Below, in pieces: positions 9,727 through 58,624 of a stretch of DNA of 64,000 nt (the stretch's first letter is position 1; each line of letters starts with the position of its first letter). The translations under genes were made by a program, and so were the position numbers. Under the pieces are notes generated by a model. It had not been told where the DNA came from. It worked only from the letters and a program-made list of their open reading frames with translations, and ran no database searches. Source of the stretch: Octopus sinensis (taxonomy: Eukaryota); the NCBI RefSeq assembly GCF_006345805.1, contig NC_043003.1:50158001-50222000 (forward strand), read 5' to 3'.

Positions 9727-10509
9727 TACACAGAGAGAGAAAAACACAGAAAGAAGGAGAGAAAAAAAATGCGTGCAGTAGCTAACGAATCAACATGGCG
9801 ATCTGATTTCGGCCAGAGGTCAAAGATCAAACATGAGACGCGAGAGCGAAATAAGGGAGATAATAGGGTTGATAATAGGGTTGAGGGACCAGCTAAAAGT
9901 GCGTGGGAGGGGTCTGGATGTGTGTATGTATAGGTTGGTGTATGTATTAGTATGTATAAGGGTGTGTGTGTGTGTGTATGAGAGAGTATTAGTGCGTAAG
10001 ATTGGTCTGGACGTGCGTATGTATGGGGTTGGTGTATGTATTAGTATGTATTAGTATGTATTAGTACGTATTGGTATGTATAGGTATGTGTGTGTGTGAG
10101 AGAGTATAAGTGCGTATGCGGGGTCTGGACGTGTGTATGTATAGGGTTGGTGTAATTATTAGTATGTACTAGTATGTATTAGTACGTATTAGTATGTATT
10201 AGTTGGTGTGTGTATTAGTATGGCACATCATATGTGATGTGATGTGTAAAGTCATGTGGTGTAGTGAGGAGAAGAGGGGGAGGAGAAGGGGGAAGAGGAG
10301 AGGATGGGGAAAAGGAAGGGGAGGAGGGGGATGAAGGAGGAAAGAGGGAGAGGGGAGAGAGGGAGTGAGGGAGCAGAGGGAAGGGGAAGAGGGAGGGAGA
10401 AAGAGGGAGAAGGGAAGGGGCGTAGGGTGAAAGGATGAAGGACTGAAGAAGTAGGGGTCGGGGGGAGAAAGGATAGGTGAGGAGGGGGGAGAGGGGGGTT
10501 AGATGAGGA

Positions 10510-11700
10510 GGGGGGAGAGTTGAGACTAAATGGCGTATAAGAGCGAAGAGAGAAGATTAATTCCTGTTCACGGCGCAAACGGGAATCCGGATGGCCTCTG
10601 TGTAAGGACAAACCGAACACAGATAGGTGTTGCAAGGAGTGACCGGTGGAGCGGAAATGGCGTGAGACCGGTGTGTCGTTCGCAAGGTGGATGTCACGAA
10701 GGTGTTCCGCGAACCGGTCAGCCAAGCGGCGTCCCGTTTGTCCGATGTACAAGGAAGAGAGAGCAAGAGATGCAATAGATAATATTGCTGGAGGTGCAGG
10801 TGAAGGAGTGGATGATGGGATAGGGTCGATGGTGGGTGCTAGTGAGGCGGGTGGTGTTGGAGAGGTAAGGGCAAGTGCGGCAACGTGGGCGGGAGCAGGG
10901 GAACGAGCCGGGTTGGGAGGTAGGGTCAGGGAAGGAGCTATGGACCAAAAGGTCTCGAAGGTTGTGGGCTCGTTTGAAAGAGGGGAGGGGTCGGTTAGGG
11001 AAGAGGTGTGAAGTGGACGGGTCGGACTGTAGATGACGGAAAGCTCGAAGAATGGTGCGTTGGAGACGTAGGGTCGTGGGGTGGTAAGTGAGGGGAAAAG
11101 GGAGGCGGGAGACTACAGGGCGGGTTCGGGGAGAGAGAGCAGATACACGGTCCACGGACCGTGCTCTGGCAAGGGCGGTGTGGATAGTGGTGGGGGGTAT
11201 CCACGTAGGGTGAAGTGGTGAGCCATACGTTGAGACTGAGTCTCAAAGTCATGGTCGTCACTACAGAGCCTACGTAGACGGAGGAATTGGGAATAGGGGA
11301 TGGAAAGCTTGGTGTGTTCTGGGTGGGAGGAAGCGAAGTTGAGGTATGAGTGTGAGTCTGTGTGTTTGTAGTGAATGGAGGTGGTAAGAGTGGAGTGAAG
11401 AATGCTAACCGAAATGTCGAGGAAGGAGACAGAGGTGTTGGAGATAGTGGAAGTGAAGTGGAGGGCTGGATGGAAAGATTGGACGAAAGAGAGGAAGGAA
11501 TCTAGATGTTCGCGGGAGAGTGAGGTGGCACCGATAATGTCGTCAATATAACGACCATATAGTTCAGGAGTGGGACCAGTGAAATTAGAGAATATTTGGG
11601 CCTCAACATAGCCAACGAACAGGTTCGCATAGTTGGGGCCCATTCGCGTTCCCATGGCCACTCCCGAGACCTGATGGTAGAACTCGCCCGCGAACGAGAA
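10510..11700 (-). pseudogene. Penelope RT-GIY-YIG polyprotein C-terminal half, two frameshifts
   Basis: FSFAGEFYHQVSGVAMGTRMGPNYANLFVGY...YGRYIDDI...FLDI...YKHTDSHSYLNFASSHP...SIPYSQFLRLRRLCS. Cys-rich linker PCSRPRCRTCPY...FTCTSSNIIYCISC. YIGQTGRRLADRFAEH...HF. Frameshifts near 11190 and 10760. Confidence 0.95.
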
Positions 11701-17244: not shown

Positions 17245-17554
17245 TCATCATGTGATCATGTGACCGACCAGGCTATCAGATGTTGCTACACATCGCTGGT
17301 CACAATACACTTCGCATTGTTTTAGCCTTCAAATGACGCCACCCCGCTGGCTAAGCGAGCAGGCCAACAGAAGAAAGAGTGAGAGAAAGTTGCGGCGAAA
17401 GAGTACAGCAGGGATCGCCACCATCCCCTGCCGGAGCCCCGTGGAGCTTTAGGTGTTTTCGCTCAATAAACACTCACAACGCTCGGTCTAGGAATCAAAA
17501 CCGCGAACCTACGACCGCGAGTCACTGCCCTAGCCACTGGGCCATTGCGCCTCC
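17245..17554 (-). mobile_element. SINE family 3 (clear pol III A/B boxes)
   Basis: Minus strand ggaggcgcaaTGGCCCAGTGGctagggcagtgactcgcggtcgtaggttcgcGGTTTTGATTCC..., ending (cacatgat)n. Confidence 0.9.
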
Positions 17555-17557
17555 ACT

Positions 17558-17795
17558 TAACGTAAAGACAGACGAAATACCTATTTCTTTACAACTCACA
17601 AGGGGCTAAACACAAAGGGGACAAACAAAGACAGACAAACGGATTAAGTCGATTATATCGACCCCAATACGAAACTGGTACTTAATTTCGACCCCGAAAG
17701 GATGAAAGGCAAAGTCGACCTCGGCGGAATTTGAACTCAGAACTTATTGACAGACGAAATACCTATTTCTTTACTACCCACAAGGAGCTAAACAC
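17558..17795 (-). mobile_element. Partial tandem array of tail-B SINE-2 units
   Basis: Two gacgaaatacc|tatttcttt junctions about 180 bp apart. Confidence 0.85.
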
Positions 17796-18019
17796 AGATA
17801 ATACATGATAAATCTTGAATTTAAATCCCATACAATTGTTTCCATTCTTATCCATGTTATTATGGGTAAGAATCGAAACAATTGTATGTAATTTGTATTT
17901 AATAGTTATTATTTAATATATCATACCATATTATTATAAGAATATAACATAATATAATATTATCTTAATAATTTGAACTTTTGAATTGACAATCGTATAT
18001 CTCCATTTTCTTTTCATAT

Positions 18020-20769: not shown

Positions 20770-21125
20770 CGGCCGGCCTACAGATGAAAGGAAAAGTCGA
20801 CCTAGTTGGAATTTGAACTGAGAATGTAAAGGCGGGCGAAATACCGCTAAGCATTTTGTCAAACGCACTAACGACTCTGAAAGCTCGCCGCCTTATATAT
20901 TCTTTCTACCACAGGAATAAGGCTGGAAATTTAGTGGGGAGAGACCTAGTCGATTACATCGACCCCAGTGCTAAACTGGTACTTATTTTATCGACACGAA
21001 AGGATTAAAGGCAAAACCGACCTCAGCGGCTTTTGAATTCAGAACGTAAAGACGGGTGAAATGCCGCTAATCATTTTGCCTGGCGTGTTAACGATTCTAG
21101 CAACTCGCCGCCTTTCGCCGCCTTA
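20770..21125 (-). mobile_element. Two adjacent SINE family 2 copies (one partial)
   Basis: Both end in gctcgccgcctt or ctcgccgcctt (head, minus strand) with the central domain. Confidence 0.8.
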
Positions 21126-21457
21126 TATATCATTAAGTATTTAATTGCTTATATCATCATCATTATCATCATCATCATTAGAGGCGTTCATGGCAGAATT
21201 TAATGACTGTTGAACTAAGCGCATTGCGGTAATTACTCCAATATTTCATTTCTTAGTTTAAATCTCACTCAAATCAACTTTAGGTCCTACCTTCTTGGCG
21301 CCGATAACATTAATACAGGATGATTTATGAAATCGATCAAATTCTAATTTCTTGTGTAATAATTTCGTGAAGCCCAGGTGTATGTTCATGACTTTGTCAA
21401 TTTAAACTAATAATCTGGTGTTAAATAGAAAAAGAAGGTCCAGAAGATGATCTAGAT

Positions 21458-37219: not shown

Positions 37220-37781
37220 CTTCTTCTTCTTCTTCTTCTTCTTCTTCTTCTTCTTCTTCTTCTTCTTCTTCTTCTTCTTCTTCTTCTTCTTCTTCTTCTT
37301 CTAATCAGGACTCACGCCATTAGCCACAAAGATTAATCTCTAATTCAAGCGTACTCTAAGATACTAAGAATGCGTGTGGCAACTTGAAGATCCACCCACC
37401 ACACGCGGTAGACTGGCGGTTGCACGAGTGCGAAAGCTACGTTGTTATCCTCATTCCATAAACGGTGGCTTTTAACGGGTGGAGAGCTGAACCATCCTGG
37501 GGTACAGAGGATTCGCAATCTAGACTAGGGTCTCAAAGTTTACCACACCATAGTGGGTTACAAAATGGTTCCTCTGATTTGTGGCAGAAGTAGGAAGAAA
37601 GAGTGAGAGAAAGTTGTGGTGAAAGAGTACAGCGGGGTTCATCACCCCTGCTCGCCAGAGCCTCGTAGAGCTTAGGTGTTTTTGCTCAATAAACACTCAC
37701 AATGCCCGGTCTGGGAATCGAAACCGCGTTCTTACGACCGCGAGTCCGCTGCCCTAACCACTGGGACATTGCGCATCCACT
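37220..37781 (-). mobile_element. Chimeric SINE: family-3 head plus a different ~290-bp body plus (GAA)n tail
   Basis: Whole unit flanked by tctgctgct (37211-37219 and 37782-37790). Confidence 0.8.
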
Positions 37782-37954
37782 TCTGCTGCTGTTATTTGTA
37801 GTTGGCCGTACGACCGCATAGAGGTTTCCTCGTGGGCCGGTTAATTGACGACATCGGTAAAGTGCACTAAAGAGAATGTACCTAGTCTCATCTCTCTATA
37901 TTCTCAGTCCTCGTTACACCAAATCTTTTATTCTGGTACGTCTATCAGTCATTA

Positions 37955-38292: not shown

Positions 38293-38807
38293 TGTCTGTT
38301 TTCCCTGTATATGTCAAAGGTCAGGTAGGTTGACGTGCTGGTAGAAACGTTAGAGCCTCGGTAAAATAAAATAGAACGAAACACTACAGTTTAAGGTGGG
38401 TGATTACAGCACATAACGTTTGAGCTGTTTAAGTGCGTGTCTCTACAGTGTTCGAATTCAACTGAGGTCAACTACGCCTTTTTATACTTACAAGAGTATA
38501 TAGAAGTAAAATACCTGCCAGGTATGAAATTTAATCTTATTGACCTTGATGTATTTTTATTGACACACCTAATGAACTATAGTTCGTTCCTTATACATAT
38601 GTTAGAAAAAAAATATCTAGAAGGGTGATCGACAGATTCAATGAAGTCATACTGTATTTACACACGACCCTCCAAACCAAGTTGGGTTCGGGTTCATTTT
38701 CTTCCTTACGGAGGTGATAAAATAAAGGGCCAATCAAATACTGGAATCGATATAAAATGCTATACGACATCTCTTCTCTACAAATGTACTGCCTTATGTT
38801 AACGTTT

Positions 38808-39115
38808 GGAGGCACATGGCCTAGTGGTTAGAGCAGAGGACACGCGTTCAAGGGATCACGGGTTCGAATCTCAGACCGGGCGATGTGTGTGTTTATGAGC
38901 GAAACACCTAAGCCCCACGCGGCTCCGGCAGAAAGTAATGGCGAACTTCTGTTGACTCTTTCATCGCAACTTTCTCTCATTCTTTCCTCCCACATCTTGC
39001 AGCTCACCTGCGACAGACCAGCGTCCCGTCCAGGTGGGGAACCTATACGCCAAGGAAACCGGGAAACCGGCCCTTATGAGCCAGGTGTGGCTCAAGAAGG
39101 AACAAACAAAAACAA
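38808..39115 (+). mobile_element. SINE with family-3-like head/centre and V-domain-like 3' part
   Basis: A box tggcctagtgg, B box ggttcgaatct. 3' gcgtcccgtccagg...gaaaccgggaaaccggccc...atgagcc, tail (aac)n-like. Confidence 0.85.
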
Positions 39116-40002
39116 TTTTTTACGTTTACTATTAACACTTAGGATGCTGGCTACAAAAATCCGTAGATGATCAGACTAAATGACTTTCAGGTCCCGAGAT
39201 AATACGGGTAAAAAAATCCCCGTTTTTCATCCTTCAAACGACCATGAAATGTTGTTAATTTTTTATTTGTCTAATCCAGTTAATGAAACGTAACTCGAAA
39301 TGTTCACGCCAAGTCTTTGACTGTACATGCATCCAACGATAGATAATGACGTAACATAATTTGGTCAGGATGCATCGCCAGGTTGTATGCATTTAATCCA
39401 TTGTTAAGGAGCAAACTCCCTTCTGTGAGAAAAAGGGTGTGAAAGAAAGAGATAGAGAAGAAAGGAAATGAAAGGAAAGGAGGAAAAAGTAAAATATTTT
39501 GGAGGAAGTACTGAAAGAGTATGAAGAGGGAATCCTGTAGGTGCAAAGATATGTATATGGAGATTCTCGGTTACTGACTCCCGGGCGGAGATAAAACCCA
39601 GATTTACTCGGTTTATAGATAACATGTATACGGAACGGAAATGTGCATTGGGGTTTATAAATAACTTAACTATTCCAGTGGTTCGCAAACTAAGAAATCC
39701 CAACACCAACAACAGCCCCAAATATTAGTGAAATGTTTTATTTCCCACTTTTTTGCTAATCAGAAGAAAAGTCTTTGCACCTTTGTAATCGTTTTGGCCT
39801 TAGACTACATTAAAACCATTTTCAGTTTATTGAAAATGGGGATAAGGCCAATATGACCGCCCCCTTTCAATCATCTCAGCTCCCGCCCGTACAGAAATAC
39901 TGGGGGATGGAGAGTGCTTAGAGAGGGCGTGATTGTTCTTAGAAATTTTCTTAGAAATATTTTTTGAATTGATTTCTTTTTAAATTTTGAAGGCTGCTAA
40001 AT

Positions 40003-40617
40003 ATTCTTTTCTACTCTAGGCACAAAGCCGGAAATTTTGGAGGAGGGGGCAGTCAATTAGATCGACACCAGTACGCAACTGGTACTTATCGACCCCGAAA
40101 AGATAGAAGGCAAAGTCGACCTCGGCGGAACTTTGAACTCAGAACGTAAAGACGTACGAAATACCGCGAAGCATTTTGCCCGGCGTGCTAACGTTTCTTA
40201 TTTCTTTATTGCCCACAAGGGGCTAAACACAGAGAGGACAAACAAGGACTAGCAAACAGATTAAGTCGATTACATCGACCCCAGTGCATAACTGGTACTT
40301 AATTTATCGACCCCGAAAGGATGAAAGGCAAAGTCGACCTCGGCGGAATTTGAACTCAGAACGTAGCGGCAGACGAAATACCTATTTCTTTATTACCCAC
40401 AAGGGGCTAAACGCAGAGGGGATAAACAAGGACAGACATAGGTATTAATACGATTACATCGACTCTAGTGCGTAACTGGTACTCAATTTATCGACCCCGA
40501 AAGGATGAAGGGCAAAGACGACCTCGACGGAATTTGAACTGAGAACGTAACAGCAGACGAAATACCGCTAAGCCTTTCGCCCAGCGTGCTAACACTTGTG
40601 CCAGCTCGCCGCCTTAA
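40003..40617 (-). mobile_element. Head-to-tail SINE-2 trimer (two tail-B units plus one standard-tail unit)
   Basis: One full head at 40617 and junctions at about 40382 and 40198. Confidence 0.9.
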
Positions 40618-40629
40618 AAGAATTTCATA

Positions 40630-40775
40630 TTCTTTTCTACTCTAGGCACACGGCCCGATGTTTTTGGAGATGGGGGCCAGTCGATTAGATAGACACCATT
40701 ATGCAACTGGTACTTAATTTATCGTTCCCTAAAAGATGAAAGGCAAAGTCGACCTCGGCGGAATTTGAAGACAGC
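40630..40775 (-). mobile_element. SINE family 2, 3' part
   Basis: Standard tail atattcttttctactctaggcac plus central domain. Confidence 0.8.
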
Positions 40776-40964
40776 TAAATATTGATGTATATGTTTGTGC
40801 GCGCGTGATTTGCGAACACTTGCAATATCTTATTAGTTTTATTTTAAATCTTAATTTGTAATGTTGCCCTCGGTTCTAATTTCGTTTTTGTTTACAGGCA
40901 CTAATACTATTAATTTAGTTTTAAATCTTGCTATAATTACTGCTCTTCTGTTATTATATTCAGC

Positions 40965-41290
40965 GAGGCATGGCTGTGTGGCTAAGAAGTTCGCATTGCA
41001 ACTATGTGGGTTTTGAAATCAGTCTCACTGTATAGCACCTTAGGCAAGTGTCTTCTACTGTAGCCCCAGGTTCACCAATGCCTTGCGAATGCATTTGTGT
41101 GTGCGTGTGCTCCGTACCACATAACCGGTGTTGGTCTTTTTATCCCCCCCCCACCCCGTCACATAGCTGTTCGCTAAAAAAAAAAGAGAAACAGATCAAA
41201 ATTGGATAGTACTGGGGTCAATTTGTTCGACTAACCTTTAAAGATCGTGCCTGGCATGGTCATAGTTCAATGACTGAAGCAAGTGAAAGA
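40965..41290 (+). mobile_element. Older diverged SINE family 1 relative
   Basis: gcatggctgtgtggctaagaag head, accttaggcaagtgtcttctac motif, tail catggtcatagttcaatgactgaagc. Confidence 0.7.
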
Positions 41291-41302
41291 TGTAAAAATA
41301 TA

Positions 41303-41687
41303 TTTATTTCTTTATTGCCCACAGGGGGCTAAACATAGAGGGGACAAACAAGGACTGACAAAGAGATTAAGTCGATTATATCGACCCCAGCGCGTAACTG
41401 GTACTTAATTTATCGACTCCGAAAGGATGAAAGGCAAAGTCGACATCGGCGGAATTTGAACTCAGAACGTAACGGCAGACGAAATACCTATTTCTTTACT
41501 ACCCACAAGGGGCTAAACACTGAGAGGACAAACAAGGATAGACAAACGGATTAAGTCGACCCCAGTGCGTAACTGGTACTTATTTAATTGACTCCGAAAG
41601 GATGAAAGGCAAAGTTGACCTCGGCGGAAATTGAACTCAGAACGTAACGGCAGACGAAATACAGCTACGCAGTTCGCCCGGTGTGCT
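41303..41687 (-). mobile_element. Tail-B SINE-2 dimer with 16-bp TSD
   Basis: Flanked by aagatgtaaaaatata (41287-41302 and 41688-41703). Confidence 0.9.
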
Positions 41688-42114
41688 AAGATGTAAAAAT
41701 ATAAAAGAGGGAAAACATGTGGAGGAGTATTTGTAAAACGTCATTGGGTGAACTGGGGCGCTGAACCTCGAAGGTTTGTGAACCACTCCTTTATGCAGTC
41801 AGTCGCTTGGCTTATTAGAAATAACAGCCAAGTTTTCCTCATCTCATACTTACTCTACCGTCCTAATAAAGGTGAACACACAGGTATAATGCCGTCCCTG
41901 GTATATAAACTAAGCATGATGGTGACATATGGAGCATTGCCGATCATAGGTGTCGTCGATCAGGCTTGACCGCCGACATAATATCCACGACGGTAATGAC
42001 AATATACAATATTTCCCGGTATACAAAGCGACGCAGTTAATAATAGAACAAACATAATATAAATATTCGATCATTGTCACTATCTTTCCAAATTCTGCTG
42101 CATTCTATATATGA

Positions 42115-43581: not shown

Positions 43582-44174
43582 TTCGACTTGTATGTCGAAA
43601 AAATGCGGTAGTTTCATTTCTATTTTTTAATTAATTTTTTTTTTATTTATTTCGTCTGATTGCAGGAATAGAATGCTTGGAAAGCTAGAACGAAAGACTG
43701 AAAAATAAAATTGTATTTTAAAACTAAAAATTATAAATTAGATTAAATACATAAGTTAGGGTTAGCTGTGCTGGTTCGAATTACATTAAATGAAATGGCG
43801 AATGTAGGTCGATATAATAACCTAATATATAAATCGCTGGAATTCGAGGCGACAAGCGGTGGTCTAAGTCGACAAAATGTTAATTTACTAACGATTAAAA
43901 CAGCGTGGGATGTTGATATGACCATGAGAAGAAAATCTGTAAGAAACAAAATGGGTGGTCTAACTTTACCTTTTTATATATGTATATATTTCTGTCCCCT
44001 TCCTATTTATCTTAATCATGTATTCTCTCTCTCTCCCTTTCTCTCTCTCTCCCTCCCCCTTTCTCTCATTCTTTCTCGTATTCATTTGCCTTATATTGTA
44101 TTTCTCATTTCTCTCAAATATTCTCTTTTTCTCTTTTAAACATTCTCTCTCTCTCTCTTTATATTTCTCTTTCT

Positions 44175-44376
44175 TATTTCTTTATAGCCCACAAGGGGCT
44201 AAACACAGAGGGGACAAACATGGACAGACAAGGCGATTAAGTCGATTACATCGACCCCAGTACTTACTTTATCGACCTCGAAAGGATGAAAAGCAAAGTC
44301 GACCTCAACGGAATTTGAACTCAAGACATAACGGCAGACCAAATGCCGCTAAGCACTTCGCCCGGCGTGCTAACTT
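44175..44376 (-). mobile_element. Tail-B SINE-2 monomer, 5'-truncated, 19-bp TSD
   Basis: Flanked by tctttatatttctctttct (44156-44174 and 44377-44395). Confidence 0.88.
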
Positions 44377-44443
44377 TCTTTATATTTCTCTTTCTCTTTC
44401 TCGTTCTCTTTCTTTGTATATATACACGCATGTGCGCACGCAT

Positions 44444-48017: not shown

Positions 48018-48734
48018 TGTAACTAATGAGCGTGTTGAATACAGGTATCGATGAAAACAGCGTCCTACTTTAGTCAGTGAATTTTGTTATACTTCGAGAA
48101 TATTCTATCATGCTGTCCAACATGGCTAGGCATGGAAGTGGATTATAATGGCTGGAAAATCTTTGATATGTCAGCTCCATCAGAGCTGATCGGGGGAAAA
48201 TAAACAACAACAACAACAATAACAACAACAACAACAACAACAACAAAAAACAACTACTACTGCTACTACAAACGAGTCATCGAGAAACAGGCGACTTGGT
48301 AAAAAATAGATGTCAAAACCTCTCAAATCACACCCTACACTCTTATAAAATTTAGAACATATTAACCAATGTGGACGTAGATATAATGGAAAATGTGAGT
48401 CGGTGACCTGCTTTGCTGGAAGGCATTTGGTATATTGATAAGTCTCTTCAATCAGTCAACATAGAGCTCAAGATTAACAACAGTAACTACTATAAACGAT
48501 AAATTGTTTGGATGAAAATGCCGGTTACAGATCTATAGATTTTAAATACCGGATTTATCTAGCAAAAATAAGTACCGTTGATAAACCAGCAATAATTTCG
48601 ATAGGAATATTTGTGCTTTATATACTGAATACTTGGGAAGGCCAACATGTGTCCAGAGTAGTGTTGGTATAATTATAACTAGCGGGAGTCATAGAAATTC
48701 ACGTTTTATAAATGTTCTTATTTTTGTATTCAGA

Positions 48735-49870
48735 CGGCGAGCTTGTAGAATCCTTAGCACACCAGGTAAAATGCTTAGCGGCATTTCGTCCGTCTTAACG
48801 CTCTAAGTTCAAATACTGCCGAGGTGGACTTTGCCTTTCAGGATCGATAAAATAAGTACCAGTTGAGTCCTCGTGCCGATGTGATCGGCTGTCCCCAATC
48901 CCTCAAATTTTAAGCCTTGTGCCTATAAAATGGTTTTATAGGCGCAGGGGTGTCTGTGTAGTAAGTAGCTTGCTTACCAACCACATGGTTCCGGCTTCAG
49001 TCCCACTGCGTGGTACCTTGGACAAGTGTCTTCTCCTATAGCCTCTGGCCGACCAAAGCCAAACGGATTAAATCGATTACATCGATCCCAGTCCGTAACT
49101 AGTACTTATTTAATCGACCCCGAAAGGATGAAAGGCAAAGCCGACCTCGGTGGAATTTGAGGCTCAGAACGTAAAGGCAGGCAAAATACCTATTTCTTTA
49201 CTACCACAAGGGGCTAAACATAGAGGGGACAAACAAGGACAGACAAACGGATTAAGTCAATTACATCGACCCCAGTGCGTAACTGGTGCTTAATTTATCG
49301 ACCCCGAAAGGATGAAGGCAAAGCCGACCTCGGTGGAATTTGAGGCTCAGAACGTAAAGGCAGGCAAAATACCTATTTCTTTACTACCACAAGGGGCTAA
49401 ACATAGAGGGGACAAACAAGGACAGACAAACGGATTAAGTCAATTACATCGACCCCAGTGCGTAACTGGTGCTTAATTTATCGACCCCGAAAGGATGAAA
49501 ATCAAAGTCGACCTCGACGGAATTTGAACTCAGAACGTAGCGGCAGACGAAATACCGCTAAGCATTTCGCCCGGCGTGCTAACGATTCCGCTCGCTTGCC
49601 GTCTTAATAACTACAAATAATTGCATGTAATATATATATATATATATATATAGACAGTGTTTAAAGCAGCCATGAGCTGGCAGAATCGTTACCGCGCCGG
49701 GCAAAATGCTGACAGCATTTCTTCCAATTTGACGTTTTGTGTTCACATGGGATCGACTTTGCCTTCCATCCTTTTGGGGTCGATAAAATACGTACCAATC
49801 GAGCACTGGGGTTGATGTAATGCCCCCACCCTCGAAATTGCTGTCCTTGTGATAAAATTTTAAGGTTAAA
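48735..49870. mobile_element. SINE cluster: family 2 (+, 48735-48930), family 1 head (+, 48941-49040), tail-B trimer (-, 49041-49605), family 2 tail-C (+, 49672-49865)
   Basis: Family motifs as above. Confidence 0.85.
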
Positions 49871-52356: not shown

Positions 52357-52539
52357 ATAACTATCAACACTTAACTTAAACATAGTCGACAGATTATCAA
52401 GTCTGCTTCGAAATCCTCAACGTTCTTTATCTGGAGGCACTCTTTTCCCGGAATATAAACAAAGATATATCGAGAAATGCGGCACATTCTTTAGAATATA
52501 ATACAAACCAATTTATGAATAATATTAAATCGTTTGAAG

Positions 52540-52985
52540 GCGGCGAGTTGGCAGAAATGTTAGCACGCCGCGCGAAATGCTTGGCGATAATTCGACTGTC
52601 TTTATGTTCTGAGTTCAAATTACGCTGAGGTCGACTTTTCCTTTCAGCCTTTCGGGGTCGATAAATTAAGTACCAGTTGCATACTGGGATCGATTTAATC
52701 GACTGGCCCCCTGCGCCAAAATTTCGGGCCTTGTGCCAAGAGTAGAAAATAATATCAAATCGTTTGAAGGCGGCGCGCTGGTAGAAACGTTAGCTCACCG
52801 GGCGAAGTGCTTAGCAGTATTTCGTCTGCCTTTACGTTCTGAATTCAAATTCCGCCGAGGTCGACTTTTCCTTTCAGCCTTTCGGGGTCGATAAATTAAG
52901 TACCAGTTGCGTACTAGGGTCGATCAAATCGACTGGCCCCCTTCCCCCAAATTTCGGGCCTTGTGCCTAGAGTAGAAAAGAAAAT
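52540..52985 (+). mobile_element. Two tandem full SINE family 2 copies
   Basis: Each copy is preceded by aatatyaaatcgtttgaa. Confidence 0.9.
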
Positions 52986-55033: not shown

Positions 55034-56374
55034 AATGAAGCGACAATGAGTCTTAAGGGGGCTTTTGAGGCTCTTGACAGATTACGTCAAGATCTGAGGC
55101 ACAACTCAAGGCTAATGGGCGGCCTAACAGTACTCCTTGCAGGCGACTTTTAACAAACACTCCCAGTCGTTCCAAAGAGAACGAGAGCAGATGAGGTAAA
55201 TGCGAGCATCAAATCTTCACACCTTTGGAGCAAGGTTAGAAAGTTGAAACTCACAACAAACATGAGAGTTCAGTTAGGTGGTGATGCGCACATGGAGAAC
55301 TTCTGCAGGCAATTAATGGATATTGGAAATGGTGCTGTAATTTTTGAGCAAGATGAGAAGATTAGTTTACCCTTTTGCAATTTGGTGTCAAATATACACG
55401 GACTATTGGCGAGAGTTTTCTCCAATCTGGACGCACAATTCACACACCATTGTTGGCTGAGAAAACGTGCAATTTTGGCGCCAAAAAATGTCGCAGTCTA
55501 TGGCATAAACAATCACCTTCTGGAACAACTGCCTGGCGATCGTCGCACATACAAGTCAATTGATACTGTCCTCCACACCAATGATGCTGTTCATTACCCC
55601 GTTGAATTCCTCAATAGCCTTGCACCTTCAGGTCTACCACTGCATGAATTGCATCTAAAGGTTGGAGCCCTAGTTATGCTTTTAAGAAACCTCGATCTCC
55701 CAAATTTATGCAATGGCATGAGTCTTATTACAAAAATTGATGTAGACAGTGTTGGAGGCATCAATACTGACTGGGAAAACAAGTGGTGAATGTTTCCATT
55801 CCAAAGATTCATCTGATTCCTTCCGACACACAAATTGATTTCAAAAGGCTACAATTCCCACTGAGATTAAGCTTTGCGAGCATCAACAAAGCGCAGGGTC
55901 AGACATTGGAAGTGGTAGGCCTTAACCCCTTACCCGGCAGAAACGAATATATGCGTTTTGACCGAAATCGTTTTTTTCCATCTCTGGCGAGTTAACTCGT
56001 CAAAAGATAGACTCGCCAAAATCGACAGCAAACGAGTTCCTTCGTCTAAAAACGGGTTAACTCGTTTCTGCCCAATGCCTTAATTTAAAATCAATATTAT
56101 TGAATTAAAATTCATAATAAATAAGGTTTGAAATATACCTCGAAATCACCATTCAAAACATAGTAAAATAAAACAATTAAAAAATATGTCTGAAAAAATA
56201 CATTTATTTTCAAAATAATTGTTGGGTAAGGGGTTAATCTTGTAGGACCTGCTTTTTCTCACAGATAGCTCTATATCGGATGCTCTAGAGTTGGAAATCC
56301 TGGAAATTTATTCATCTATGCACCCAACGGCAAAACCAAAAATCATTGAGTATCACGAAGTCCTGCAAGACTGA
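55034..56374 (+). pseudogene. Helitron PIF1-like helicase, C-terminal part (stops, frameshifts, MITE insertion)
   Basis: EATMS...ALDRLRQDLR...MGGLTVLLAGDF*QTLPV...LTTNMRV...RAILAPKN...YPVEFLNSLAPSGLPLHELHLKVGALVMLLRNL...LCNG...FKRLQFPLRLSFA-SINKAQGQTL.VVGL[MITE]NL...FSH.*LYIGCSRVG. Confidence 0.95.
55926..56233. mobile_element. piggyBac-like MITE (308 bp)
   Basis: TTAA|ccccttaccc ... gggtaagggg|TTAA. Removing it with one TTAA restores the helicase frame (VVGLNL). Confidence 0.92.
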
Positions 56375-57502: not shown

Positions 57503-57548
57503 CACCACACACACACACACATACACACACACACAAAGGTATTTATGC

Positions 57549-57775
57549 GGCGAGCTGGCAGAGACGTTAGCACGCCGGGCGAAATGCTTAGCGGTATTTC
57601 GTCTGCCGTTACGTTGTGAGTTCAAATTCCGCCGAGGTTGACTTTGCCTTTCATCCTTTCGGGGTCGATAAATTAAGTACCAGTTCCGCACTGGGGTCGA
57701 TGTAATCGACTTAATACCTATGTCTGTCCTTGTTTGTCCCCTCTAAATTTAGCCCCTTGTGGGTAATAAAGAAAT
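57549..57775 (+). mobile_element. Full tail-B SINE-2 monomer with 12-bp TSD
   Basis: Flanked by aggtatttatgc (57537-57548 and 57776-57787). Confidence 0.92.
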
Positions 57776-58624
57776 AGGTATTTATGCATATGTATTTATA
57801 TACATATATGTGTGTGTGTGTGTGCGTGTGTATGTATATACATGCACATACAGACATTCTTAATAACTCGCTGACATTTCTGCTACGTTTCAATACCAAC
57901 AGTCATCGGTTGCTTACATACATATTTATATACATACATCGTTATACTTATACATATATGCGCATATACAATATACGTAACATACACATACATCATTTAT
58001 AATTGATTATCTTTTCTATATCCTTCGTTGTCAGCGATTACCCTGGCAAAGAAGAGTAGGTGAAGAAGTAAGGGAATATAATTTCGTTTTGTCATAGCTA
58101 TAATGTATTAACAAGTCTCTACGTTTAGAAAAAAAAACTAAATAAATAAATAAAATATCAAAATTGCGAAAAGCCGGAGAATTGATATGAAATCTTGGTA
58201 ACGGAAGAGGTGAGATTAAATTGATTATCATTACCTCCGATAGAGAGTTCTTTTACTGACATTAATAAATAATTATTTATAACATTGACACAGCGCTATA
58301 GCGTGTACAGTTGTGTAAATCGATTTACAGAACTATAAATGGCACTTATTGCATCGGTCACAACGGGTGTGGAGAAAAAATGTGATTAAAGCCCGGCTTG
58401 TTGTGAGATTTTTCAATCATTGCTTCTATTAGCAGTATGCTTATACTATTTTTTTCCGGGCATGGCTGTACATTTAAGAACCTTGTGCAATCAAATGCAC
58501 GGAGTTTCAGGATCAGTCCTACTATTAGGCAAGTGTCTTCTACCATATCCCTGGTCTGACCAGTGGCTTTGAGAGTGAACTGGCAAACGGAAGCTTTATA
58601 GAAGCCTGAAAAAAAATACTAATA

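What the first reader, a model, noticed from the sequence alone, without database searches (positions are those of the whole stretch)
40003..40617. A SINE subfamily forming head-to-tail multimers with two recurring junctions
Seen: units of ~185 bp (family-2 body plus tail ...ccccttgtggg.a.taaagaaata) restart at fixed internal points of the SINE head. Junction B (GAAATA|GGTATTTC) occurs at about 17580, 17760, 40382, 41490, 49190 and 49370. Junction A (GAAATA|AGAAACGTTAGC) occurs at about 40198. Junction B is itself a palindrome, so the tail end can pair with the restart site. Inference: either the SINE inserts into its own copies at preferred sites, or multimeric or circular RNA is reverse-transcribed processively, unlike ordinary monomeric SINEs.
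Basis: partly seen in the sequence, partly recalled or inferred. Interest (0 to 1): 0.75.

Follow-up and report, generated by a model that had tools for sequence, protein, structure and literature searches.

The report
SINE head-to-tail multimers, fixed restart point
A short retrotransposon (SINE) in this animal genome often occurs as two or three head-to-tail units that always restart at the same internal base. These multimers appear to be copied and inserted as single pieces and later resized by DNA recombination, so this is an ordinary example of a known behaviour of SINEs.

Summary
On the minus strand, a 232-nt SINE ('fam2', tail ...CCCCTTGTGGGyArTAAAGAAATA) forms arrays in which later units lack the first 48 nt. 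The junction AAAGAAATA|GGTATTTYG occurs six times at four loci (0 expected). Junction A, GAAATA|AGAAACGTTAGC, occurs once.

- **Independent loci:** the arrays share no flanking DNA, so they are not segmental duplications.
- **Inserted as units:** the 41k dimer is 5'-truncated and flanked by one 15-bp target-site duplication (TSD). The whole 40k composite, four SINE pieces, lies between one 20-bp TSD pair (18/20).
- **DNA-level growth:** the 49k trimer is a clean product of unequal crossover of a dimer.
- **Multimer RNA:** a monomer has a TSD that starts with GGTATTT, the first bases of the restart site. This fits a template RNA that ran past a junction.
- **Restart position:** base 49 is the first base after the loop of a very stable predicted hairpin in the SINE head.
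- **No circle:** there is no ribozyme, and three of four arrays begin with head sequence.

Best reading: a multimeric SINE whose junction arose by reverse-transcriptase template switching, then propagated as a unit and was resized by recombination. Whether the junction arose once or repeatedly cannot be decided from 64 kb. This is a known kind of element (dimeric SINEs, SINE-derived tandem repeats), of low to moderate interest.

The parts
40383..40614 (-). U40a: first fam2 unit, full length (positions 1-232) with head
40199..40382 (-). U40b: second fam2 unit (positions 49-232). Junction B lies at 40382|40383.
40003..40198 (-). U40c: sister-family 'fam1' SINE from about position 16 to its own tail (...GCCTAGAGTAGAAAAGAAT). 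Junction A lies at 40198|40199.
40615..40626 (-). 12-nt spacer GAAATTCTTTTA between the tail of the upstream fam1 piece and the head of U40a
40627..40763 (-). F: 5'-truncated fam1 copy (about position 84 to its tail). It is the leftmost piece of the composite in SINE orientation. TTCAAA microhomology marks its 5' junction.
40764..40783 (-). Upstream copy of the 20-nt TSD AATATTTAGCTGTCTTCAAA that flanks the whole 40k composite
39986..40005 (-). Downstream copy of that TSD (AATATTTAGCAGCCTTCAAA, 18/20 identical). Its first 3 nt overlap the fam1 tail.
41489..41689 (-). U41a: first unit of the 41k dimer, 5'-truncated at about position 23
41305..41488 (-). U41b: second unit (49-232) of the 41k dimer. 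It is the closest relative of U40b (93.5%).
41689..41703 (-). Upstream copy of the TSD TATATTTTTACATCT of the 41k dimer. It overlaps the element start by 1-2 nt.
41288..41302 (-). Downstream copy of the TSD of the 41k dimer
17559..17798 (-). 17k array: positions 198-232 | 49-232 | 49-71, with two junctions B. The 5' end is truncated inside a unit. The 3' end abuts the head of an unrelated SINE (17355-17558).
49374..49604 (-). U49a: first, full-length unit of the 49k array
49191..49373 (-). U49b: mosaic unit. Positions 49-105 match U49c and positions 106-232 are identical to U49a. It is the product of an unequal crossover.
49067..49190 (-). U49c: last unit (49-171), cut off by a CORE-type SINE in the opposite orientation
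44175..44374 (-). fam2 monomer, 5'-truncated at about position 22. TSD AGAAAGAGAAATATAAAGA at 44156-44174 and 44377-44395.
57547..57776 (+). fam2 monomer (positions 3-232). TSD GGTATTTATGC at 57538-57548 and 57777-57787. The TSD starts with the 7 bases of the restart site.

Best explanation
fam2 is a SINE with a tRNA-like head, mobilised by a LINE, that exists largely in the form 'head + n x (positions 49-232)'. The multimer itself is a unit of retrotransposition.

**Shown**
- The arrays are independent insertions with different flanks.
- Single TSD pairs flank whole multimers.
- Multimers show 5' truncation, as cDNA copies do.
- The 40k fam2 dimer and the 41k and 17k arrays contain no T4 run in the sense strand, so RNA polymerase III could read through them.
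- Unit number then changes at the DNA level. The 49k trimer arose from a dimer by one unequal crossover between misaligned units.

**Inferred**
- Junction B was created at the RNA/cDNA level. The LINE reverse transcriptase ran off a SINE RNA whose 5' end lay at G49. That base comes directly after the UAGC loop of a very stable head hairpin, which suggests an RNA nicked in the loop. The enzyme then jumped to the 3' end (...GAAAUA) of another SINE RNA.
- Multimer loci made this way were then transcribed and copied again. A few founding events could therefore account for most junctions.
- Junction A and the four-piece 40k composite are one-off products of the same template-switching ability.
For: - **Recurrence.** There are six base-exact junctions B at four loci, with 0 expected by chance.
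- **Independence.** No flanking homology exists between arrays. Dimer-to-dimer identity is about 87% and stops at the SINE ends.
- **41k dimer.** It is 5'-truncated at position 23 and flanked by the exact 15-nt TSD TATATTTTTACATCT.
- **40k composite.** All of 40006-40763 lies between 20-nt TSD copies that match at 18/20, with 6-nt microhomology at the 5' junction. No TSD occurs at any internal junction.
- **17k array.** It begins at position 198 of a unit and continues through two junctions.
- **Monomer U57.** Its TSD GGTATTTATGC begins with GGTATTT. That 7-mer occurs at only 8 non-SINE sites on both strands of the window, a chance of about 6e-5 per site. This is the microhomology expected if the template RNA ended just past a junction B. 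TATTT is reported as a pol III terminator in other SINEs (PMC8466645).
- **No terminator.** The 40k fam2 dimer and the 41k and 17k arrays have no T4 run in the sense strand.
- **Terminal units.** U40b and U41b, the 3'-terminal units of two arrays, are each other's closest relatives (93.5%). They alone share T174 and A182, and also share C221, which U44 carries too.
- **Unequal crossover.** U49a and U49b differ at 12 sites, all within positions 56-105, and at none within 106-232. U49b and U49c differ at 1 site within 49-105 and at 8 within 126-166.
- **Hairpin.** The stem 34-44/49-59 with loop 45-48 has pair probabilities of about 1.0. It appears in both the MFE and centroid structures.
Against: - **Small sample.** There are only six fam2 loci and about ten units, and no further genome sequence could be found.
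- **Mixed unit subtypes.** Subtypes do not sort cleanly by position. First units are of three subtypes, and U41a (a first unit) shares the TTAAAT variant with U49c (a last unit). This fits repeated de novo formation, or recombination, better than one master lineage.
- **TSDs do not exclude nesting.** A TSD pair around a whole array is also expected if a second copy inserted inside an older one.
- **Missing ends.** The 3' ends of the 17k and 49k arrays are lost, so their TSDs cannot be read.
- **Post hoc coincidence.** The match between position 49 and the hairpin loop edge was noticed after the fact, with a chance of roughly 0.03-0.2. The corresponding hairpin for junction A is not stable in the consensus ensemble.
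- **No RNA data.**
Confidence: 0.55

Rival explanations
1. Each multimer forms de novo. In every such retrotransposition event the reverse transcriptase runs off a SINE RNA cut in the loop of the head hairpin (5' end at G49). It then jumps to the 3' end of another, separate SINE RNA. The junction recurs because the cut site is a hot spot, not because it is inherited.
For: - The three readable dimers combine different unit subtypes: ACCTATG + GGCAAT at 40k, TTAAAT/GGTAGT + GGCAAT at 41k, and GGTAGT + TTAAAT at 49k.
- The 40k composite shows that fusions of different RNAs do occur within one TSD pair. It joins fam1 to fam2 at junction A and fam2 to fam1 across a 12-nt spacer.
- The restart lies exactly at the 3' edge of a loop with unpaired probability 1.0.
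Against: - No solitary copy starts at position 49, although run-off without a jump should produce some. The two monomers start at positions 3 and 22.
- U40b and U41b share derived sites found in no other unit.
- U57's TSD indicates that RNAs already containing junction B served as templates.
- Four multimeric loci out of six would require a very high jump rate.
Confidence: 0.25
2. Nested self-insertion. The partner LINE endonuclease prefers to nick just before GGTATTT, and the SINE carries that site at position 49. New copies therefore land inside old ones. The 5' end is resolved in register by annealing to the homologous host sequence, which leaves a seamless tandem.
For: - The monomer U57 inserted at a genomic GGTATTTATGC site.
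- About half of all GGTATTT sites in the window lie inside SINE copies.
- A true nested insertion exists in the sister family. The copy at 20899-21114 has the 14-nt TSD ATATAAGGCGGCGA, which includes the first 10 nt of the head of the older copy.
- TSDs of the host copy would still flank the whole array.
Against: - All six junctions are seamless, yet the one proven nested insertion is not. It duplicates the head start.
- The other fam2 and fam1 TSDs start with unrelated sequences: TATATTT, AGAAAG, GGCTCAC, ATATAA and AAATCG. The endonuclease is therefore not GGTATTT-specific.
- No fam2 copy has landed at position 49 of a fam1 copy, although fam1 also carries GGTATTTCG.
- The 17k array starts at position 198 with non-SINE DNA upstream. 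A host-plus-insert history cannot give that without an extra deletion.
- The primer that such a nick would produce (...AAATACC-3') is not complementary to the RNA tail.
Confidence: 0.1
3. Independent DNA-level tandem duplication at each locus, by replication slippage or unequal exchange, as proposed for the origin of SINE-derived satellites.
For: - Unequal crossover is demonstrated for the third unit of the 49k array.
- A monomer with GGTATTT both at position 49 and directly after its tail, such as U57, has a 7-nt direct repeat that could seed exactly this duplication.
Against: - The same base-exact breakpoint occurs at four unrelated loci.
- The two units of each dimer are 12-15% diverged, as much as unrelated copies, so they are not recent local duplicates.
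- The TSD after the 41k dimer does not start with GGTATTT.
Confidence: 0.05
4. A 184-nt circular RNA (positions 49-232 joined tail to G49) is copied by rolling-circle reverse transcription.
For: - The tail GAAAUA can pair with UAUUUC (positions 51-56). That would bring the 3' end next to G49.
- The array period equals the putative circle length.
Against: - Arrays at 40k and 49k begin with head positions 1-48, and the 41k array begins with 23-48. A circle would not contain these.
- No hammerhead or any other Rfam family matches, at gathering thresholds over the window or at E<=10 over 39900-41800.
- Arrays have only 2-3 units.
Confidence: 0.03

Closest known systems
SINE-derived satellites (sSats) of squamate reptiles (Vassetzky et al. 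2023, PMC10702118)
   Same: Both are tandem repeats of part of a SINE, with a longer terminal unit that reaches the SINE terminus. Both occur at many dispersed loci with the same unit structure. Unequal recombination is invoked for growth.
   Different: Here arrays have only 2-3 units and are not homogenised. The repeated unit runs to the very 3' end of the SINE. Whole arrays are flanked by TSDs, so they behave as retrotransposed copies rather than as satellites that grew in place.
Dimeric and multimeric SINEs that amplify as units or pile up head-to-tail: Alu, colugo t-SINE dimers and trimers, Dip/B2/Ves multimers (PMC8466645; reviewed in PMC4758252 and PMC10702118)
   Same: Both show head-to-tail SINE units at many loci. 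The same question applies: were they retrotransposed from a multimeric template, or did one SINE insert into the tail of another?
   Different: Those multimers consist of complete units or of two different monomers. Here every later unit lacks the first 48 nt, which removes the region where box A is expected. Only the first unit can carry a full promoter.
Chimeric retrotranscripts made by LINE reverse-transcriptase template switching: U6-L1 type chimeras and R2 end-to-end template jumping (from my own knowledge), and template switching in passerine TguSINE1 (PMC5729268, listed, not read)
   Same: Different RNAs are fused head-to-tail inside one TSD pair, with the 3' partner 5'-truncated. The 40k composite has exactly this anatomy.
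   Different: The partner LINE is unknown and is not an L1 poly(A) system. Donor and acceptor here are mostly the same SINE, which gives apparent tandem repeats.
Animal retrozymes: tandem repeats that encode hammerhead-ribozyme circular RNAs (from my own knowledge; review PMC11722881 listed, not read)
   Same: Both have short tandem units of about 170-400 bp derived from a non-autonomous retroelement.
   Different: No hammerhead motif is found, and the arrays carry a unique head at the 5' end.

Membership tests
SINE (tRNA-related head, LINE-mobilised) | Short, non-coding, dispersed multicopy element with variable-length TSDs and frequent 5' truncation | tested here: met
   About 25 fam1/fam2 copies lie in 64 kb. 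Exact TSDs of 11-19 nt flank copies at 12.7k, 21k, 41k, 44k and 57k. 5' ends fall at positions 3, 22, 23 and 198.
SINE (tRNA-related head, LINE-mobilised) | Head derived from a tRNA, with pol III boxes A and B | tested here: inconclusive
   A box-B-like GAGTTCAAATTCC at about 74-86 and a weak box-A-like CTGGCAGAAACG at about 11-22 are seen by eye only. ARAGORN finds no tRNA. Rfam finds no tRNA match even at E<=10.
SINE (tRNA-related head, LINE-mobilised) | 3' tail shared with a partner LINE | not tested
   No LINE with the tail ...CCCCTTGTGGGyArTAAAGAAATA was identified in the window. The tail pattern gave 0 hits in genome contigs and viral contigs.
Multimeric SINE amplified as a unit | One TSD pair around the whole multimer and none at internal junctions | tested here: met
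   This holds for the 41k dimer (15-nt TSD) and the 40k composite (20-nt TSD, 18/20). The 17k and 49k arrays lack intact 3' ends.
Multimeric SINE amplified as a unit | Identical junction at independent loci with unrelated flanks | tested here: met
Multimeric SINE amplified as a unit | Position-specific diagnostic substitutions: first units cluster together and second units cluster together | tested here: inconclusive
   U40b and U41b cluster (93.5%, with three shared derived sites). First units are heterogeneous, and U41a shares a variant with U49c.
Multimeric SINE amplified as a unit | A transcript that spans the junction | not testable with these tools
   Only indirect evidence exists: no T4 terminator inside the 40k fam2 dimer or the 41k and 17k arrays, and the GGTATTT start of U57's TSD.
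SINE-derived satellite | Tandem repeat of part of a SINE with a longer terminal unit that reaches a SINE terminus | tested here: met
   The first unit is 1-232 and later units are 49-232. The definition is taken from PMC10702118.
SINE-derived satellite | Long, homogenised arrays (tens to about 1000 units) | tested here: not met
   Arrays have 2-3 units, and units within an array are 85-90% identical apart from the recent crossover product.
Retrozyme / ribozyme-bearing circular RNA repeat | A self-cleaving ribozyme in each unit | tested here: not met
   No Rfam family matches at gathering thresholds over the window. Only a chance SCARNA7 hit appears at E<=10 over 39900-41800.
Template-switch chimeric retrotranscript | Two or more different RNAs fused in the same orientation within one TSD pair, with downstream partners 5'-truncated | tested here: met
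   The 40k composite reads fam1(84-196) + 12 nt + fam2(1-232) + fam2(49-232) + fam1(16-196) between TSD copies at 40764-40783 and 39986-40005. The alternative of two successive events is not excluded.

The most novel reading that the evidence does not exclude
Multimer formation could be a regular, ongoing outcome of this SINE's life cycle. The SINE RNA would be cut in the loop of its head hairpin, much as tRNA halves are made by anticodon-loop cleavage. A jump-prone LINE reverse transcriptase would then stitch the 3' fragment onto the 3' end of another SINE RNA. Junction B would then be re-created independently many times. RNAs that end just past a junction would home by microhomology to GGTATTT sites, including other SINE heads.
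Probability: 0.2. Interest if true: 0.55.

Novelty: new member of a known kind. Interest (0 to 1): 0.3.

Why it matters
This locus gives a clean small example of how a SINE becomes a short tandem repeat. An RNA-level fusion sets a fixed junction. Retrotransposition then spreads the multimer. Unequal crossover then adds units, which is caught directly in the 49k array. That sequence of steps is the proposed first stage in the birth of TE-derived satellites.

For genome annotation, repeat libraries should carry the 49-232 unit and the multimer as such, or copy counts and ages for this family will be distorted. It does not change current understanding of retrotransposition, unless the loop-cut plus template-jump route proves frequent.

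Tried and rejected
- **More copies from outside the window.** A metagenome scan with a 28-mer from the SINE body returned 66 contigs, but they share only a 34-bp core with this SINE and belong to another SINE family in another organism. Tail-pattern scans of genome contigs and viral contigs returned nothing. No genome-wide census was therefore possible.
- **Ribozyme or structured-RNA explanation.** Rfam gave no hits at gathering thresholds over the whole window. An E<=10 search of 39900-41800 gave only a chance SCARNA7 hit. ARAGORN found no tRNA.
- **Segmental duplication of one ancestral array.** I rejected this because self-BLAST alignments end at the SINE borders.
- **Deletion within a full-length tandem via the GAAAT repeats** (tail and positions 37-41). 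I rejected this because it would retain GCTTAGC at the junction, which is absent.
- **The tail/restart palindrome as a primer or annealing device.** The cDNA end, or a nicked target primer, at position 49 has the same sense as the tail and is not complementary to it. I found no role for the palindrome in priming.
- **Hairpin 1 as the site of junction A.** It is predicted for U57 and for a 3-sequence alignment, but not in the consensus ensemble, so I gave it little weight.
- **Literature on octopus or cephalopod SINEs.** The papers listed or read describe no such multimers. The 2015 octopus genome paper is not held.
- **TSD of the 17k array.** I could not define it, because its 3' end abuts another SINE whose own end is uncertain.
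- **Source organism.** I ran no further search on identifying it. 'Octopod' rests on my memory of the CORE-type SINE sequence and on base composition.

Full report
**1. What is in the sequence**

The window is AT-rich (about 37.5% G+C) and packed with microsatellites and short interspersed repeats. From memory, the abundant CORE-type SINE (...CTTGGGCAAGTGTCTTCTACT...) looks like an octopod genome. I did not test this.

The element in the finding lies on the minus strand. Read in its own sense, a full copy ('fam2', 232 nt, reference rc(40383..40614)) has three parts:
- a head, AGGCGGCGAGCTGGCAGAAACGTTAGCACGCCGGGCGAAATGCTTAGC|GGTATTTCGTC...;
- a body that contains a strongly conserved core, ...TTCATCCTTTCGGGGTCGATAAATTAAGTACC...;
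- a tail...TTTAGCCCCTTGTGGGyArTAAAGAAATA.

A sister family ('fam1') shares the head and core but has a different tail...GCCTAGAGTAGAAAAGAAT.

**2.

BLAST of the reference against the window, together with direct reading, gives six fam2 loci.

| Locus | Structure (reference positions) |
|---|---|
| 17559-17798 | 198-232, then 49-232, then 49-71 |
| 40199-40614 | 1-232, then 49-232, followed by a fam1 copy from about position 16 (40003-40198) |
| 41305-41689 | 23-232, then 49-232 |
| 49067-49604 | 1-232, then 49-232, then 49-171 |
| 44175-44374 | monomer, 22-232 |
| 57547-57776 (+) | monomer, 3-232 |

The 18-mer AAAGAAATAGGTATTTYG across junction B occurs six times, with 0.00 expected from shuffles. 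Junction A occurs once. TRF gives periods of 183-184.

**3. The arrays are independent insertions, and multimers were inserted as pieces**

- **No shared flanks.** A self-comparison of the window shows that similarity between arrays (about 87% over 390-400 bp) stops at the SINE borders. They are not copies of one duplicated chromosomal segment.
- **41k dimer.** It is 5'-truncated at position 23 and sits between two exact copies of TATATTTTTACATCT, at 41689-41703 and 41288-41302.
- **40k region.** It is larger than the finding. In SINE orientation it reads:
  - a 5'-truncated fam1 copy (F, 40627-40763);
  - a 12-nt spacer, GAAATTCTTTTA;
  - U40a (1-232);
  - U40b (49-232);
  - U40c (fam1, from about position 16 to its tail).

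  The whole is flanked by AATATTTAGC[T/A]G[T/C]CTTCAAA, 18 of 20 identical, at 40764-40783 and 39986-40005. TTCAAA microhomology marks the 5' junction. No internal junction carries a TSD. Either one retrotransposition event copied four RNAs in series, or F inserted first and the other three pieces arrived together in its tail.
- **17k array.** It starts at position 198 of a unit, directly after non-SINE DNA, and then runs through two junctions B. A 5'-truncated multimeric cDNA would look like this. Its 3' end abuts another SINE, so its TSD cannot be read.

**4. DNA-level change of unit number is directly visible**

In the 49k array:
- U49a and U49b differ at 12 positions, all between 56 and 105. 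They are identical from 106 to 232.
- U49b and U49c differ once between 49 and 105, and at 8 positions between 126 and 166.

U49b is therefore a clean mosaic of U49c (5' part) and U49a (3' part). One unequal crossover between misaligned dimers, with exchange in 106-125, gives exactly this. The array was originally a dimer whose two units differ at 19 of about 123 sites, as much as unrelated copies do.

**5. Evidence that RNAs containing junction B served as templates**

The monomer at 57547-57776 is flanked by the exact TSD GGTATTTATGC (57538-57548 and 57777-57787). Its first seven bases equal positions 49-55 of the SINE, the bases that follow the tail in junction B.

GGTATTT occurs at only eight non-SINE positions on both strands of the window. 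The chance that a given TSD starts with it is about 6e-5.

In target-primed reverse transcription, the start of the TSD is where the nicked bottom strand anneals to the 3' end of the RNA. A primer ending ...AAATACC-3' is complementary to ...GGUAUUU but not to ...GAAAUA. The simplest reading is that this RNA came from a multimer locus and ended, or was primed, just past a junction. TATTT is described as a pol III terminator in other SINEs (PMC8466645). The 40k fam2 dimer and the 41k and 17k arrays have no T4 run in the sense strand, so read-through transcription is possible. A preference of the endonuclease for GGTATTT is the alternative. The other TSDs begin with unrelated sequences, which argues against it.

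**6. Why position 49?**

Folding the monomer, three aligned full-length copies and the consensus all give an 11-bp hairpin:
- 5' arm, positions 34-44: GGCGAAAUGCU
- loop, positions 45-48: UAGC
- 3' arm, positions 49-59: GGUAUUUCGUC

Pair probabilities are about 1.0 and the loop is fully unpaired. The restart is the first base after the loop.

I infer that the donor template had its 5' end there, for example an RNA nicked in the exposed loop. The reverse transcriptase would run off and continue on the 3' end of another SINE RNA. This is an inference from one coincidence, with a chance of roughly 0.03-0.2. The matching idea for junction A (the loop of a first hairpin) is weak, because that hairpin is not stable in the consensus ensemble.

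However, the cDNA end and a nicked target primer at position 49 both have the same sense as the tail, so I found no priming role for it. At most, the junction rebuilds a short mimic of the head hairpin.

**7. One origin or many?**

*For inheritance from multimeric source genes:*
- The two readable 3'-terminal units, U40b and U41b, are each other's closest relatives (93.5%). They alone share T174 and A182, and also share C221, which U44 carries too.
- There is evidence for multimer RNA templates (section 5).
- No solitary copy starts at position 49.

*For repeated formation:*
- First units are of three subtypes. U40a groups with the monomer U57.
- U41a shares the TTAAAT variant with U49c, which is a last unit.
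- The one-off junction A shows that such fusions do arise.

With ten units, the window cannot settle this. I put about 0.55 on 'RNA-level origin, then propagation as a unit plus unequal crossover' and about 0.25 on 'formed anew at each insertion'.

**8. Rejected or weak alternatives**

- **Nested insertion at a preferred site with in-register repair** would also leave host TSDs around the array. It has four problems:
  - It requires six of six seamless joins, whereas the one proven nested insertion is not seamless. That fam1 copy at 20899-21114 has the TSD ATATAAGGCGGCGA, which includes 10 nt of the older copy's head.
  - It predicts hits in fam1 heads, and none is seen.
  - It cannot give the 17k 5' end without an extra deletion.
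  - It produces a primer that cannot pair with the tail.
- **Rolling-circle copying of a 184-nt circle** is contradicted by head sequence at the 5' end of three arrays and by the lack of any ribozyme.
- **Independent local duplications** are contradicted by the identical breakpoint at four loci and by the 12-15% divergence between the units of each dimer.

**9. Comparison with what is known**

- **SINE-derived satellites of squamates** are the closest description: tandem partial SINE units with a longer terminal unit that reaches the SINE end, at many loci, with unequal recombination proposed for growth (PMC10702118). The same paper and PMC8466645 note that proper SINEs form dimers to octamers. 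They also note that it is often unknown whether these arise from dimeric templates or from insertion into tails.
- **A limpet satellite** derived from a Nin-SINE shows the SINE-to-tandem route in molluscs (PMC11121367).
- **Template switching by LINE reverse transcriptases** is established knowledge (from my own memory).

The present case is a new member of these known kinds. Its particular features are:
- units that run to the very 3' end;
- loss of the first 48 nt in every later unit;
- short arrays flanked by TSDs;
- a restart at a hairpin-loop edge.

I found no paper that describes this in cephalopods.

**10. Verdict**

The finding is of low to moderate interest (0.3). The decisive test is a genome-wide census of tails, TSDs and unit phylogeny, which needs the source assembly.

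Noticed in passing
window SINE positions 102-135 (e.g. 40480-40513); loci L001-L066, e.g. L001:2969-3016 and L052:1075-1108 plus 1248-1281: A 34-bp core of the SINE body (CTTTCATCCTTTCGGGGTCGATAAATTAAGTA) is shared at 91-97% in most of them (85-97% overall) with otherwise unrelated SINE-like repeats on 66 JGI metagenome contigs, presumably host DNA of another marine invertebrate. This looks like one of the deeply conserved SINE central domains, possibly Nin/Deu, which I did not verify. L052 carries two such cores 173 bp apart.
   Followed up: partly
20782-21128 (-): A full-length fam1 SINE (20899-21114) inserted into the first 10 nt of an older fam1 copy. The 14-nt TSD ATATAAGGCGGCGA (21115-21128 and 20885-20898) duplicates the start of the head. 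This is a clear nested insertion that yields a head-to-tail pair.
   Followed up: yes
52518-52982 (+): Two full-length fam1 copies lie in tandem with period 230. The first is flanked by AAATCGTTTGA (52527-52537 and 52757-52767), and the second follows that repeat directly. This is either an insertion immediately upstream of an older copy or an old duplication of SINE plus flank. The second copy has no recognisable TSD.
   Followed up: partly
17355-17558 (-), 37594-37782 (-), 38807-38989 (+): A different SINE of about 200 bp has a tRNA-like head (GGAGGCGCAATGGCCCAGTGGTTAGGGCAG...GGTTCGATTCC...). At 17558 its head abuts position 71 of a fam2 unit with no visible TSD. This could be a deletion or another template-switch chimera.
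   Followed up: partly
48935-49066 (CORE-type SINE, opposite orientation), 48732-48925 (+) and 49674-49851 (+) fam1-like copies: The 49k array sits in a pile of SINEs. A CORE-type SINE replaces the last 61 nt of its third unit, and older fam1-like copies in the opposite orientation lie on both sides.
   Followed up: no
55244-55789 (+): This ORF matches the Pif1 helicase 2B domain (Pfam PF21530, E=2.6e-15). It is probably a fragment of a Helitron-type or Pif1-like helicase gene.
   Followed up: partly
10252-11661 (-): Three consecutive ORFs look by eye like a retroelement remnant, for example MYIGQTGRRLADRFAEHL..., which resembles a GIY-YIG endonuclease of Penelope-like elements. Pfam gave no hit at E<=0.01, so this is unconfirmed.
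   Followed up: partly
57538-57548 / 57777-57787: The TSD of the fam2 monomer begins with GGTATTT, the same seven bases that follow the tail in junction B. The chance of this is about 6e-5 per site.
   Followed up: yes
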